From positions 1-48,131 of the forward strand of contig MU619300.1 in NCBI GenBank assembly GCA_025201805.1: a stretch of 48,131 nt of DNA. The letters are read 5' to 3'. Made by a program: the position numbers and the translations under genes. Below the pieces are notes generated by a model, which had not been told where the DNA came from, ran no database searches, and saw only the letters and a list, made by a program, of their open reading frames with translations. Shown here one piece after another: positions 44,761 through 48,131 of the stretch (position 1 is its first letter; every line of letters starts with the position of its first letter). The stretch comes from Parasitella parasitica NRRL 2501. Taxonomy: Eukaryota; Fungi; Mucoromycota.

Positions 44761-46560
44761 CTACAATTTCTATAGTATATACCTGTAAATGTATATATGT
44801 GAATACACAGATTTAATTCAACAGGGCCATGTAATTATTGCTACTACTACAATGTAATATGCTTGTTTAAATCAATAAAAATAAATTTTATGTACATATC
44901 ATAGATCAACCAGTTTTTTTGGTACCTGGTTGCCACGGTTGAATTAAGGCAGCGGCTTCATATGGTTTGATTTTAGTTGTCTAATCCAGGTTTCTTGCAA
45001 TGAATCATTATCGAAAGAAAGTTATAGATTAACTCTCGATCTCAAAAACTTATTCAAACGATAAAGCACTTTTAAGTCTTTGATGTATCGCCTACTTACT
45101 TGAAAAGATTTAAAATCCACGGCATTATTTAAACTGAATGAATGGCTCGACTCTCTTGTGAACCAGGAAATCAACATTAGCCCCTTAAACTAGTTTTGTG
45201 GCAAAATCAATTTGATGTGGAGTATTATCCATTTATTGCGCTAGTTGATGCGATTTAGAGATACAAACATTTTTCAAATGAATAGTCAACCGTTAACTGA
45301 CTGAAAAACTAGACCAATTTATTTCATATCTGTATACGACCATGCTTCTATTAATTCTTCAAGATTACGTGAATATTAGAGTCTCGTAGAGGACTCAGCT
45401 CTTTGTTGACATGTTGAAAATTTGCAAGCTTTGGTGTCAGATTTACTAGGCTTTAGATGTCGTTAAAGTTGGCCTTCATGTTAAGAAAGCTGTCAGTTTC
45501 ATGATATCAGCCGTAATTTCACATATATTAGCTAGTAGAATAGGCCAAGCAATGATCATAAACGTCTACAACTCATAATTTGTTTGGAGCAATTTAACCT
45601 CTATTCAACACAATCAATATTCCCACTTTTACTTTTGTTATTTACAACATGAAATTCAACAGTACAAAAACGTTAACTTTGAAATAGAATAGTTCTTTTT
45701 TTTTTGCAAAACAAAAATACCGCAGTTGCTCATCCAGCAAGTATGAGACAAATTCTGTAAAGACTCAAAGGGAGGTCGATGTTACTATAGATTTATTGAT
45801 CGATTTAGAGATGGATGAGCATACATGTTCAATGATATGTCCTTTTAGTAGAAAAATACAGTTGCTGCTTATGTAGAATGCCCTTTGTTTACGATGGCGA
45901 GTATCACTCTAGACTCATCATTCGATATTAAACGTTGTGCAATATACAAATCCTTAAGCTCTTAATACCTGCTGATAATGTAGTTGACCTGAACAAATAA
46001 TGGCCTTGTAAATCAACGAAATAATCCATAGCCGTCTATTAGGAAGATTTAGCTATATACTTCTCTACCATCTTCATGAGACTAGCTCATGTCGAAACAC
46101 AATTGGTACGGCGATAGCATTAGAAAGTCTATCATTTTTAAAAAGAGTAACTTGAGATTACAAGCAAAAATACAGCCTCCTATCCCCTAATTAGATCATA
46201 ATACTTTTATGGTCAATCACCGAGACTAATATGCTTAATTTGAAACGACTGATTTGAGCTTGTATACTGATATCCCAGGCTTGCAGTATCTGCCTATTCG
46301 TATTTTTATGTAAAGATGCGATACAATACCAAAAATGTGTTCAGTTCTAGTAGAGGTCATGCAAGGGCAAATTATTAGTACCCTCATCACCGAATACAGA
46401 GCTGTTTACATTTAATATTTGAATATTCTCCTAAAAGTTAAGGAATACCCCTGTTTTTATAAACTATACAGTTGATCCAATAAATTATGTTGTCCGGGCC
46501 GAATAAACTGTCGCCCAATCAGAAATAAGTTTTCGCTGTTACAGTCGACGAAACTAGGTT

Positions 46561-46745
46561 GGGCCAGTAAGAAAAAATTTGGGTCATCTTAAAATTGAAT
46601 TTGGACGTCGCAATGAAAGTGGGACACCAGTATGAAAATGGGACAGCAATATGAAATTGGGACACCAGTATGAAATTGGGACACGATTATAAAAATGAGA
46701 CGCCAGTATGGAAATGATACATCAAGATGAAAGTAGAATATATTG
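46561..46745 (+). repeat. Tandem array of ~7-9 copies of a 19-bp unit (consensus GGGACACCAGTATGAAATT), probably a transposon subterminal repeat
   Basis: Units start at 46602, 46621, 46640, 46659, 46678, 46697 and 46716, with weaker copies at 46561 and 46581. Confidence 0.85.
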
Positions 46746-47122
46746 AGACACGCCTAGTTTTGGCCAAATGCGTGAACAAGAGGGTATAGTCCTCTTATAC
46801 CTAGCATGAAAAGTAATAAATAGGCTATCAGAATACTATGCTATGATACTACAGAGAACTCAGGGCTTTTATCAATTCTAAAAAAGATGAGGTCATTAGG
46901 TCTTTGTTGTAGTCATTGCTTAAACTCTGTAATAGTAGGCTTATAATTCAGTACAAGTGCCAATGTTGCGAAAATAATGCATCAGAAAAGCTGATAATTT
47001 CATATGAATTTGTTCAGTCATATAATAAGCAGCGTTTGATGTATATAAAGGACATGATCTTGGATCTAAAGATTTATTCAGTTAGATGGAACTTAATAAA
47101 AGCTCACACAAAGCGTACTGAA

Positions 47123-48131
47123 ATGCCTCCAAAAAGAAAGCCAGGTAAAGTATTTAGTTTAAAGTCTAACTGTATATCATATGTCTTACTGTATACTTTT
47201 GGATTCTTCTGGAAACAAAGGTGCTGGAGATTCTGGACCAAGAAAAAAGAAGGGAAAAGAGAAAGGTATGCTAAATATTTATATAACTGAAAAAGACACT
47301 AATAAAACTAATAATACCAACGTTGCTTTAGCCAAGGATGTTGCTTCAAGTATTCCTGCTGACTTTTTTGAAGATGAAGAATATGAAGACTTTCAAGTTC
47401 CAATCGGTCTCCGTCCTCCTCCTTCCACAATAGCCAGAGAACAGCGCGATATCGAAGAAGCAACAAGATTGTCTTTACAAAGACAGGGTGTCGCTGAGTC
47501 CGGTGAATCTAGTTCTTCTACCAACGTACGCCAAACCCCTCAAATTGCTCGTTCCACTGTTATTGCTGATTTCGAAGAAGATGATGACTTTCAAAAGCCT
47601 ATTGTTATTCGACCTCGTACTACTCGCGCAACAACCTCAGTTACTACTCCTGTACAAGCTTCCACTCAATCTACAGGTATGCCAATACCTAAAATGAACT
47701 ATACTTTTGAGTTTTTACTAAATACTCTTTTAAATTTAATACAGGAATGTCACAAGAGTTTAAAAAGGCTGTCAGTCTCACTCCAAGTACACCTAGTCAA
47801 TCCTCTAGTACCCCAGTGTACCTATCCGAGAAAGTCAAAATGAAACAAGCGCGTTCTGAAGCCAAGAGGAAAGCTCGACAAAAATCTTCCACTACTAAAT
47901 CTAAAAGAAATCCCAATGTTGCAACAGAAGAACCTGAAGTCGTTGGTCCAAGAACTAGGAGAACAAAGTTTGTAATCAAAACGAAACTGGAAGCTATGCT
48001 AAGGGCTGAAGACTTCAATCAAGACCAAAGAACTGGCTTTATAACAGAAGTACATCGCGTTGTTCGTCATCTCAGTGATGTTACTTATGCAGCTTCATTA
48101 TTTCTGAACTGGTTCTGTCTGAGGCTCTTGA
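47123..48131 (+). CDS. Fanzor1-like (TnpB-derived) RNA-guided nuclease candidate, 5' part only; introns ~47145-47202/47220, 47266-47331 and 47677-47744
   Basis: It starts MPPKRKP. The last exon stays open to the window edge and ends TKFVIKTKLEAML...FITEVHRVVRHLSDVTYAASLFLNWFCLRLL, which resembles the first WED strand plus the long REC helix of Fanzor1 proteins. The RuvC domain is not in the window. Confidence 0.55.

What the first reader, a model, noticed from the sequence alone, without database searches (positions are those of the whole stretch)
47123..48131. Intron-containing Fanzor1-like RNA-guided nuclease gene missed by the ORF track
Seen: three introns with canonical GT donors splice MPPKRKP... 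into a frame that runs open from 47745 to the window end. It finishes TKFVIKTKLEAMLRAEDFNQDQRTGFITEVHRVVRHLSDVTYAASLFLNWFCLRLL. Established: Fanzor1 proteins are eukaryotic TnpB descendants, are common in Mucorales transposons, often acquire introns and an N-terminal NLS, and begin their folded part with a beta strand (hhKxxL) followed by a long helix ending in an A-S-x-h-h-N/K-x-aromatic pattern. Inference: this is the 5' third of a Fanzor1 gene. The RuvC D-E-D, zinc finger and omegaRNA overlapping the right end should follow just beyond the window.
Basis: partly seen in the sequence, partly recalled or inferred. Interest (0 to 1): 0.85.

Follow-up and report, generated by a model that had tools for sequence, protein, structure and literature searches.

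The report
Decayed Fanzor1 gene in mariner transposon
The last kilobase of the window is the intron-bearing start of a Fanzor1 RNA-guided nuclease gene riding in a mariner-type transposon, a known kind of element and here a broken copy, but its family has an intron that cuts the transposon's end repeats out of the likely guide-RNA precursor and is shared almost unchanged with a Mucor fungus.

Summary
Window 47123-48131 is the 5' third of a Fanzor1 (eukaryotic TnpB) gene.

Evidence:
- Beyond a withheld gap, the same copy encodes IDEYLTSQ-CPRC...CNTC-NRD (Pfam TNB domain, 40.5 bits).
- Sister copies supply DPG.
- A family profile hits solved Fanzor1 (SpuFz1, E 7.6e-13).
- A modelled relative matches Fanzor1 structures at Z 22.5-25.5, starting at the strand that equals the window's TKFVIKTKL.
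- RNA confirms introns 2 and 3. Intron 1 is unproven.

The gene is the only cargo of a 3,831-bp non-autonomous Tc1/mariner-type element (46542-50372, ~112-nt TIRs, TA duplication). This architecture was described in 2013, and the genome is Parasitella parasitica, a species with a solved Fanzor1. So it is a new member of a known kind. This copy is decayed: it has a net 149-nt loss that shifts the frame.

Extras found here:
- Left flank T|TA in 28/28 elements, a TAM-like footprint.
- A spliced intron that removes the right TIR's repeats and joins a covarying hairpin to the 12-nt tip plus host flank. This may be how the omegaRNA is made. An unchecked scan note on another copy (s1-688513) proposes the same.
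- 96-98% DNA identity to a Mucor circinelloides copy, against 82% for a housekeeping gene.

The parts
46538..46541 (+). Left flank GT + TA target-site duplication (TAM-like position)
   Evidence: TA flanks both ends in 28/28 left and 30/30 right ends of family members. The base just 5' of the left TA is T in 28/28 gene-oriented elements. The mirror position after the right TA is unbiased.
46542..46651 (+). Left terminal inverted repeat, terminus CAGTCGACGAAACTAGG
   Evidence: Inverted repeat with contig positions 50264-50372: 93 nt at 98% plus the outer arm. Homology to copies C56 and C9 begins exactly here. The 24-nt terminus occurs 78 times in the genome and 0 times in the reversed control.
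46598..46730 (+). Subterminal 19-nt tandem repeats (GAAAnTGGGACAsC), probable transposase-binding sites
   Evidence: Six copies at 19-nt spacing (family D1). The same kind of repeat (TGGGTCA) occurs in the TIRs of a DDE_3 transposase element on contig C74.
47087..47100 (+). Junction of a copy-specific deletion about 20 nt upstream of the ATG
   Evidence: Copies C56, C9, C12 and the Mucor copy carry 445-744 bp here that this copy lacks.
47123..47144 (+). Exon 1 (MPPKRKP, NLS-like)
   Evidence: The same N-terminus is in gene models P0001 and P0101 of relatives.
47145..47220 (+). Proposed intron 1 (76 nt, GT..AG), unconfirmed
   Evidence: No RNA joint found. The ancestral acceptor is mutated in this copy. 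Copy C9 and an RNA contig carry a 19-nt deletion that makes this stretch an in-frame exon. An alternative ATG lies at 47181.
47221..47265 (+). Exon 2 (AGDSGPRKKKGKEK, second basic cluster)
47266..47331 (+). Intron 2 (66 nt), confirmed by RNA
   Evidence: Joint 1263->1330 (+2) GT..AG in runs X22, X23 and a contig of X1.
47332..47676 (+). Exon 3: disordered N-terminal extension with a duplicated acidic DDDFQ-type motif (47376-47423 and 47574-47621)
   Evidence: Direct repeat D6. The motif recurs in distant relatives P0045 and P0013.
47677..47744 (+). Intron 3 (68 nt), confirmed by RNA
   Evidence: Joint 1671->1740 (+5) GT..AG in X22, X23 and X1.
47745..48131 (+). Start of exon 4. The folded Fanzor1 core begins at 47963 (TKFVIKTKL strand, then the helix with DVTYAASLFLNWF). 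The gene continues past the window. Contig coordinates, which equal window coordinates: withheld 48132-49536; C-terminal RuvC-II/zinc finger/RuvC-III 49539-50073; intron 4 50074-50149; hairpin exon 50150-50199; intron 5 50200-50360; 12-nt TIR tip 50361-50372; TA 50373-50374.

Best explanation
Window 47123-48131 is the 5' third of a Fanzor1 gene, a eukaryotic TnpB-type omegaRNA-guided RuvC nuclease. The gene is the sole cargo of a 3,831-bp non-autonomous Tc1/mariner-type transposon (46542-50372) with ~112-nt TIRs carrying 19-nt repeats and a TA duplication. The genome is Parasitella parasitica (Mucorales).

Shown here: the gene structure (introns 2, 3, 4 and 5 by RNA), Fanzor1 family membership by sequence profile and by fold, the element's ends and TA duplication, a family of at least 35 elements in two subfamilies, and the decay of this copy (a net 149-nt loss that puts the catalytic C-terminus out of frame, plus about 0.5 kb missing just upstream of the ATG).

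Inferred from the published behaviour of Fanzor1/TnpB: an intact family member would be imported into the nucleus through its basic N-terminus. It would bind an omegaRNA made from the 3' end of its own transcript, with a guide read from the host DNA right of the element. It would cut sites with a 5' TTTA-type motif (TAM = flank T + the TA duplication) that lack the element, which favours retention or copying of the transposon. Movement itself would depend on a DDE_3 transposase supplied in trans.
For: Same-copy C-terminus with IDEYLTSQ, CPRC...CNTC and NRD. Pfam PF07282 at 40.5 bits against a cut-off of 26.3. DPG in copies C9, C12 and Mucor. The N-terminal piece has 99 relatives, and P0045 joins it to a TNB domain in one protein. 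Family profile against the PDB: SpuFz1 7.6e-13, GtFz1 3.2e-8, TnpB 1.4e-4. Model of relative P0103 (pLDDT 80.5): Foldseek's top 7 are all Fanzor1 at 8e-19 to 1e-14, then Cas12f at 5e-6. VIA-align gives Z 22.5-25.5 over 500-546 residues starting at the strand aligned to the window's TKFVIKTKL, with the next best at Z 14. TIRs, TA duplication and copies. RNA joints. Frame arithmetic. Literature: Fanzor1-only elements with Mariner TIRs and TA duplications (PMC3627910); introns, NLS and a rearranged RuvC site (PMC10530073); the 5' TSD is part of the TAM (PMC13565253).
Against: The 1,405 nt after the window are withheld, so RuvC-I and the lesion in this copy were not read directly. The decay is deduced from coordinates. 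Intron 1 and the true start codon are unproven. No small-RNA data exist, so no omegaRNA has been shown. No copy that I could read in this genome is intact, so current activity of the family is unproven. The structure and profile rest on relatives that are 28-57% identical (P0103) or on paralogues, not on this copy's own full protein.
Confidence: 0.9

Rival explanations
1. This copy is an intact, active Fanzor1 gene, as the first reader implicitly assumed.
For: Both readable parts of the copy are open and keep all visible catalytic residues. Contigs of run X1 match parts of it with no differences.
Against: The N-terminal and C-terminal frames are out of register. The span between two conserved codons is 1,471 nt, against 1,620 nt in the Mucor copy (one continuous frame) and 1,621 nt in C12. 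About 0.5 kb just upstream of the ATG is missing.
Confidence: 0.06
2. The protein belongs to another TnpB-derived group (Fanzor2, prokaryote-like TnpB or a Cas12-like protein) rather than Fanzor1.
For: It shares the TNB domain and the RuvC core. TnpB and Cas12f are also hit.
Against: Fanzor1 structures score 10 or more orders of magnitude better in Foldseek, and Z 22-25 against 11.6 (Fanzor2) and 12.0 (TnpB), with full-length alignment. The element is a DDE-type TIR transposon, not IS607-like.
Confidence: 0.03
3. The two 3' introns are ordinary 3'UTR processing of a read-through mRNA and have nothing to do with guide-RNA formation. The omegaRNA, if there is one, is a contiguous transcript as in SpuFz1.
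For: The spliced contig runs at least 255 nt into the flank, like an mRNA. The spliced 3' end folds only modestly better than shuffles, z about -2.2. In subfamily B no matching hairpin lies upstream of the donor. The Helicostylum relative has no such donor.
Against: The donor and the tip-proximal acceptor are kept in two subfamilies whose 3' regions are otherwise unalignable, and also in the distant P0103 locus. Unspliced, the scaffold and guide would be separated by about 160 nt of transposase-binding repeats. In published Fanzor1 omegaRNAs the scaffold abuts the TIR, TSD and guide (PMC10432273, PMC10711439).
Confidence: 0.5
4. The 96-98% identity with the Mucor circinelloides copy reflects contamination, mislabelling or vertical descent under constraint, not horizontal transfer.
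For: Only one control gene was compared. The organism's identity rests on one annotated protein and a matching contig length.
Against: Both copies sit inside long contigs with species-typical neighbours. The adjacent chitin-synthase coding sequence is only 82% identical to its best match here, and the Mucor non-coding flank has no match. Introns and dead coding sequence are as conserved as the rest, so selection cannot explain it.
Confidence: 0.1

Closest known systems
Fanzor1-only Mariner-type elements (e.g. PUl-4) and the Mucor circinelloides MCi Fanzor1 families of Bao & Jurka 2013 (PMC3627910)
   Same: A Fanzor1 gene as the only ORF, Mariner-type TIRs, TA target-site duplication, no transposase of its own, multiple copies, a Mucorales host.
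   Different: Long (~112 nt) TIRs packed with 19-nt repeats. Two subfamilies whose Fanzor C-terminal regions are only ~40% identical share the same termini. Introns lie at the stop codon and across the right TIR.
SpuFz1, Spizellomyces punctatus Fanzor1 (PDB 8GKH; PMC10432273)
   Same: Best sequence-profile match (E 7.6e-13) and a top fold match (Z up to 25.5, on a par with PpFz1), over the full length. DPG...DEYxTS-CxxC...CxxC...NRD layout with the glutamate next to the zinc finger. AT-rich TAM containing TA (CATA).
   Different: About 14-18% sequence identity. SpuFz1 sits between 30-nt IRs and makes a contiguous ~75-nt omegaRNA scaffold. Here the stop codon and the tip are about 290 nt apart unless two introns are removed. 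This family also has a ~200-residue disordered N-terminal extension.
PpFz1, Parasitella parasitica Fanzor1 (PDB 9CF0/9CF1; PMC11423790)
   Same: Same host species, same fold (Z 25.5), TAM 5'-ATN.
   Different: A different lineage. The family profile does not reach it at E<=0.01, and single-sequence E is 0.56. The abundant subfamily B is not PpFz1 either. I did not test whether this family has PpFz1's FRI domain.
IS200/IS605 TnpB-omegaRNA (ISDra2) and IStrons
   Same: RuvC/TNB core. The guide is read from the right flank and the TAM from the left flank. IStrons also combine splicing and guide RNA in one transcript (bioRxiv 10.1101/2023.11.20.567912).
   Different: The glutamate sits at DPY->DEY next to the zinc finger. 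The host is a eukaryote and the element is a DDE transposon. [quoted passage not shown] Here spliceosomal splicing would build it.

Membership tests
Fanzor1 | RuvC-I aspartate (DPG-type motif) | tested here: met
   IWGLDPGIRD is present in copies C9 and C12 and in the Mucor copy, and it aligns to IDPNKRD of SpuFz1. In the window's own copy this part is withheld and was not read.
Fanzor1 | Catalytic glutamate relocated next to the zinc finger (DE-x-x-[TS][TS]), with none at the canonical RuvC-II site | tested here: met
   The own copy reads VVMIDEYLTSQICPRC. It aligns with LLDEYKTSSVCPRC of SpuFz1 and with DPYLTSQ of a TnpB. The upstream strand VVAFGSALFGG has no glutamate. The feature is described in PMC10530073 and PMC13565253.
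Fanzor1 | C4 zinc finger followed by RuvC-III RD, i.e. the Bao-Jurka motif D-X(125,275)-[TS][TS]-X-X-C4-X(5,50)-RD | tested here: met
   CPRC...CNTC-HTRWN-RD in the own copy. The D-to-TS distance is about 200 residues in relative P0103. Pfam PF07282 scores 40.5 bits against a cut-off of 26.3.
Fanzor1 | Overall fold closer to solved Fanzor1 than to Fanzor2, TnpB or Cas12 | tested here: met
   Model of relative P0103. Fanzor1 entries score Z 22.5-25.5 with 500-546 residues aligned. Next come CasPhi/Cas12f at about 14, TnpB at 12.0 and Fanzor2 at 11.6.
Fanzor1 | The N-terminal strand and REC helix encoded in the window belong to the fold | tested here: met
   The alignments to SpuFz1, PpFz1 and GtFz1 start at model residues 85-88. 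Residue 89 onward (SKFTIKTSL) aligns with the window's TKFVIKTKL.
Fanzor1 | omegaRNA from the right end with a flank-derived guide | tested here: inconclusive
   Transcripts cross the right end into the flank. A hairpin with an invariant AUAACA loop covaries: 4 of 8 pairs are compensatory, and 0/500 shuffles reach the score. There are no small-RNA or RNP data, and Rfam has no match.
Fanzor1 | RNA-guided DNA cleavage | not testable with these tools
   This needs expression of an intact family member with its 3' region, plus a TAM/cleavage assay.
Fanzor1 | Intact reading frame in this copy | tested here: not met
   Net loss of 149 nt, so the N- and C-terminal parts lie in different frames. This affects activity, not family membership.
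Tc1/mariner (non-autonomous) | TA target-site duplication | tested here: met
   TA at 28/28 left ends and 30/30 right ends.
Tc1/mariner (non-autonomous) | TIRs with a CAGT terminus and internal repeated binding sites | tested here: met
   TA|CAGTCGACG...CGTCGACTG|TA and 19-nt repeats.
Tc1/mariner (non-autonomous) | A DDE transposase with matching ends exists in the genome | tested here: inconclusive
   More than 170 DDE_3 matches. The C74 element (415-aa DDE_3 ORF, 102.9 bits) shares the terminal CAGTCGACGAAA (32/37 nt) and TGGGTCA repeats, but its own right tip is truncated.
Fanzor2 / IS607-type | Serine-recombinase transposon context and close similarity to TnpB | tested here: not met
   The element has TIRs and a TA duplication. 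The Fanzor2 structure scores only Z 11.6.

The most novel reading that the evidence does not exclude
In this Fanzor1 family the guide RNA is assembled by the spliceosome. One intron at the stop codon and a second spanning the right TIR's transposase-binding repeats (donor GTAAGT, acceptor the CTAG 12 nt from the tip) are removed. That leaves a short covarying hairpin exon directly abutting the 12-nt tip, the TA and the host-derived guide. This would let an RNA-guided nuclease coexist with long, repeat-laden mariner TIRs. The same element moved recently between Mucor and its fusion parasite Parasitella.
Probability: 0.35. Interest if true: 0.8.

Novelty: new member of a known kind. Interest (0 to 1): 0.5.

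Why it matters
As a gene call it fills a gap: an unannotated Fanzor1 pseudogene and its transposon in a species whose Fanzor is already a structural model.

The family-level observations matter more.
1. A 28/28 orientation-specific T next to the left TA predicts the TAM (TTTA for this subfamily, ATTA for the abundant one) from genome data alone.
2. An RNA-supported intron that excises the TIR repeats from the 3' transcript offers a testable answer to how Fanzor omegaRNAs work inside transposons with long, structured ends. It would also matter to anyone who designs guides for such enzymes.
3. Near-identity between a Parasitella and a Mucor copy, against 82% for a housekeeping gene, is direct evidence for the transposon exchange between a mycoparasite and the Mucor lineage that the PpFz1 authors only speculated about.

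Tried and rejected
- Single-sequence searches of the C-terminal piece and of relatives P0045 and P0059 against the PDB gave only weak hits or none. A family profile was needed.
- Pfam finds nothing in the N-terminal and middle pieces.
- The unspliced 3' region does not fold better than shuffles, z -0.98. Rfam has no match.
- I tested whether the abundant subfamily B encodes the solved PpFz1. It does not.
- I tried to read other copies for an intact gene, but most interiors are withheld as N.
- Looking up P0101's contig returned nothing.
- A 3-bp TTA duplication was considered as the cause of the left-flank T. I rejected it because the right flank is TA+N without bias.
- An Introner-like element (a transposon spliced out whole) was considered. 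I rejected it because the donor is internal and only the right TIR is removed.
Exons and frame pieces were searched separately by reference. The only joined sequence built was the 64-104-nt spliced 3' RNA, made from stored loci inside a script for folding.
- The withheld 48132-49536 was not reconstructed.

Full report
WHAT IS THERE. The window is contig C64:1-48131 of a 32.8-Mb, 450-contig genome. From the ATG at 47123 the + strand reads MPPKRKP. With GT..AG introns at 47145-47220, 47266-47331 and 47677-47744 (all phase 1) it continues into a frame that is open from 47745 to the window's end. It finishes ...TKFVIKTKLEAMLRAEDFNQDQRTGFITEVHRVVRHLSDVTYAASLFLNWFCLRLL. The mechanical ORF list misses it because the ORF runs off the window.

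WHAT FOLLOWS THE WINDOW. The contig goes on, but 48132-49536 is withheld and reads N. After the gap the same strand encodes 182 residues...PTVVAFGSALFGGLRGN...RKYVVMIDEYLTSQICPRCHLRSTTNERDNANFKIHPVLSCNTCHTRWNRDHMASLNIRSIF...EEFQRGMLS*. This piece passes Pfam's curated cut-off for PF07282, the TnpB/Cas12f TNB domain (40.5 bits against 26.3). Three further copies were found with the window's DNA: C56 at 98%, C9 at 96% and C12 at 77%. The readable part of C9 and the whole of C12 supply the middle of the protein, including IWGLDPGIRD.

FAMILY. The N-terminal piece was taken from the C9 copy, which is 96% identical to the window in DNA. It has 99 relatives among 1.84 billion representative proteins. 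One of them, P0045 (863 aa), joins this N-terminal domain to a TNB domain in a single protein. A search with P0059 returned full-length Mucorales proteins. A profile of 15 relatives hits the solved Spizellomyces Fanzor1 at E 7.6e-13, across WED/RuvC-I and the C-terminus. It hits Guillardia Fanzor1 at 3.2e-8 and a bacterial TnpB at 1.4e-4. The glutamate lies in DEYLTSQ directly before the zinc finger, where TnpB has DPY. That is the rearranged RuvC site described for Fanzors (PMC10530073, PMC13565253).

An AlphaFold model of the complete relative P0103 (pLDDT 80.5, pTM 0.73) finds seven Fanzor1 entries first in Foldseek (8e-19 to 1e-14), then Cas12f at 5e-6. VIA-align gives Z 22.5-25.5 over 500-546 residues for Fanzor1. 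The next best are CasPhi/Cas12f at about 14, TnpB at 12.0 and Fanzor2 at 11.6. The alignments begin at model residues 85-88. Residue 89 starts the strand SKFTIKTSL, which aligns with the window's TKFVIKTKL (47963 onward), followed by the long helix carrying DVTYAASLFLNWF.

THE ELEMENT. The gene lies between ~112-nt terminal inverted repeats at 46542-46651 and 50264-50372 (93 nt at 98%). Their outer ends read TA|CAGTCGACG...CGTCGACTG|TA. Homology between copies starts exactly there. The TIRs contain 19-nt tandem repeats. The element is 3,831 bp long and has no room for a transposase.

The 24-nt terminus occurs 78 times in the genome and never in the reversed control, mostly as convergent pairs 3.4-4.4 kb apart. 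There are two end variants. CAGTCGACG marks this subfamily A, with about nine copies. CAGTTGACG marks subfamily B, with about 25 copies, whose readable C-termini are Fanzor-like but only 37-46% identical.

All 28 left and 30 right ends examined are flanked by TA. The genome has more than 170 DDE_3 matches. One element on C74 encodes a 415-aa DDE_3 protein, shares the terminal CAGTCGACGAAA (32/37 nt) and has TGGGTCA repeats like the Fanzor TIRs. It is a candidate relative of the mobilising transposase, no more.

Fanzor1-only elements with Mariner TIRs and TA duplications were described in 2013, along with ten Fanzor1 families in Mucor circinelloides (PMC3627910).

ORGANISM. P0101 is annotated as a Parasitella parasitica protein. 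Its contig length (366,059) equals that of C12, and it maps to the C12 copy at 95-100%. The genome is therefore Parasitella parasitica, the source of the solved PpFz1 (PMC11423790). PpFz1 is a different lineage: the profile does not reach it at 0.01, and subfamily B is not PpFz1 either.

RNA. One read-laying run was available. Introns 2 and 3 are confirmed at the exact borders. A fourth intron (50074-50149) sits at the stop codon. Unspliced, the protein ends EEFQRGMLS*. Spliced, it ends EEFQRA*.

The raw-read runs X22 and X23 carry reads that continue into the host flank of the Mucor circinelloides 1006PhL copy. So those runs come from a Mucor strain, and their reads are mostly 95-99% identical to the window. 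Run X1 (contigs) is from this organism. Its loose ends match the flank of the C61 copy, the C12 copy's spliced form and a locus on C9. It holds the spliced forms of introns 2, 3 and 4.

Intron 1 is unproven. The ancestral acceptor TTTTAG, kept in C12, is TTTTGG here. Copy C9 and an X1 contig carry a 19-nt deletion that makes the stretch an in-frame exon. ATG 47181 is an alternative start.

THIS COPY IS BROKEN. In the Mucor copy the stretch from HLSDVTYAASLF to KLKYH is one frame of 1,620 nt. In C12 it is 1,621 nt (its known frameshift). In the window's copy it is 1,471 nt, so 149 nt are missing and the catalytic C-terminus is out of frame. The copy also lacks 445-744 bp that the other copies keep about 20 nt upstream of the ATG.

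The other readable copies are also damaged:
- C56 has a frameshift in CPRC and a ~1.4-kb insertion.
- C9 has two frameshifts.
- C39 has a C-terminal frameshift.
- C12 has a frameshift, a stop and a duplication.
- The Mucor copy has two frameshifts and a stop.

TAM-LIKE FOOTPRINT. With elements oriented by their gene, the base 5' of the left TA is T in 28/28 (background T is 0.34). The base before that is A in 18/23 of subfamily B (ATTA) and T in 4/5 of subfamily A (TTTA; this copy has GTTA). The mirror position after the right TA is A8 C9 G4 T9. A symmetric transposase alone should not produce this. It fits the published rule that Fanzor1 TAMs are 4-5 nt, AT-rich and include the 5' duplication (PMC13565253; SpuFz1 CATA, GtFz1 TTAA, PpFz1 ATN).

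A SPLICED 3' END. An X1 contig leaves the element at 50199 and continues TTTCGTCGACTG-TA, followed by the C61 flank. Eleven Mucor reads show the same donor joined to the sequence after the TIR's CTAG. This defines intron 5 (50200-50360), which removes the right TIR's repeats and keeps only its last 12 nt. The donor (TGG|GTAAGT in A, CAG|GTAAGA in 22/25 of B) and the acceptor are kept in both subfamilies, with hardly any AG between them.

The 50-nt exon between introns 4 and 5 holds an 8-bp hairpin with an invariant AUAACA loop. Across four lineages, 90% of cells pair and four pairs change on both sides. The covariation score is 0.462, against 0.279 +/- 0.058 in shuffles (0/500) and at most 0.14 when slid. 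The distant P0103 locus has the same order: stop-codon intron, hairpin, ACGG|GTAAGC.

After splicing, 50 + 12 nt precede the TA, close to the ~75-nt SpuFz1 scaffold (PMC10432273). This stretch folds into two hairpins at z about -2.2. None of the Fanzor papers read here mentions a spliced omegaRNA. An unchecked note of this scan (s1-688513) proposes the same idea on another copy. Whether this RNA is the guide remains untested.

HORIZONTAL TRANSFER. The Mucor circinelloides 1006PhL copy (protein P0100) is 96-98% identical in DNA to the window's copy over the leader, introns, coding sequence and 3' region. The neighbouring chitin-synthase coding sequence is 82% identical to its best match here, and the Mucor non-coding flank has no match. 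Both copies are dead, so constraint cannot explain the identity. Parasitella is a parasite of other Mucorales (PMC11423790), so recent transposon transfer is the simplest reading. The direction is unknown.

VERDICT. The finding is real and correctly interpreted, but the gene is a decayed member of a known class in a species where Fanzor1 is already well studied. The family-level observations (TAM-like footprint, TIR-spanning intron, cross-genus identity) are what deserve follow-up.

Noticed in passing
L027:2645-7385 (Mucor circinelloides 1006PhL, KE123922.1) compared with window 46542 to contig 50372: The same element is 96-98% identical in DNA across genera, introns and dead coding sequence included. 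A neighbouring housekeeping coding sequence is 82% identical and the non-coding flank has no match. This points to likely recent horizontal transposon transfer between the Mucor lineage and Parasitella.
   Followed up: partly
window 46538-46541 and the left flanks of 27 other elements (L009-L055): An orientation-specific T lies immediately 5' of the left TA in 28/28 elements (ATTA in subfamily B, TTTA in A). The mirror position at the right end shows no bias. This looks like a TAM footprint.
   Followed up: yes
contig C64 50200-50360 (L005:4200-4360): An RNA-supported intron runs from GTAAGT just after a conserved hairpin to the CTAG 12 nt from the element's tip. It removes the right TIR's repeats from transcripts that continue into host DNA.
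   Followed up: yes
L036:6692-8370 (contig C74:100191-101870): A Tc1/mariner-type element with a 415-aa DDE_3 ORF, the same terminal CAGTCGACGAAA and TGGGTCA subterminal repeats. It is a candidate relative of the transposase that moves the Fanzor elements. Its right tip looks truncated.
   Followed up: partly
L023:201-379 (contig C6:288608-288786): A 179-bp element consisting of the two TIR ends alone, flanked by TA. This is a MITE-like derivative of the family.
   Followed up: no
L005:870 joined to 3782: Seven RNA reads from the Mucor runs join these two points (2,911 nt skipped, AT..TG ends). This is probably an internally deleted copy that is transcribed, not an intron.
   Followed up: no
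window 47376-47423 and 47574-47621: A duplicated acidic motif (EDEEYEDFQVP / EEDDDFQKP) lies in the disordered N-terminal extension. Similar D-D-D-F-Q motifs occur twice in the distant relative P0045 and at least once in P0013, which suggests a conserved short linear motif of unknown partner.
   Followed up: partly
window 47087-47100: This copy lacks 445-744 bp that C56, C9, C12 and the Mucor copy keep about 20 nt upstream of the ATG, so it may have lost its promoter-proximal region.
   Followed up: partly
L056:1439-4040 (metagenome contig encoding P0103): An apparently intact relative with no detectable TIRs of its own. It lies between the ends of two other CAGT-type elements yet keeps the stop-codon intron, the hairpin and the GTAAGC donor.
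   Followed up: no
whole genome G000: More than 170 DDE_3 transposase matches in a 32.8-Mb genome. DDE_3 fragments lie directly beside the right ends of the C39 and C68 Fanzor elements, so some elements may be nested in Tc1-type transposons.
   Followed up: no
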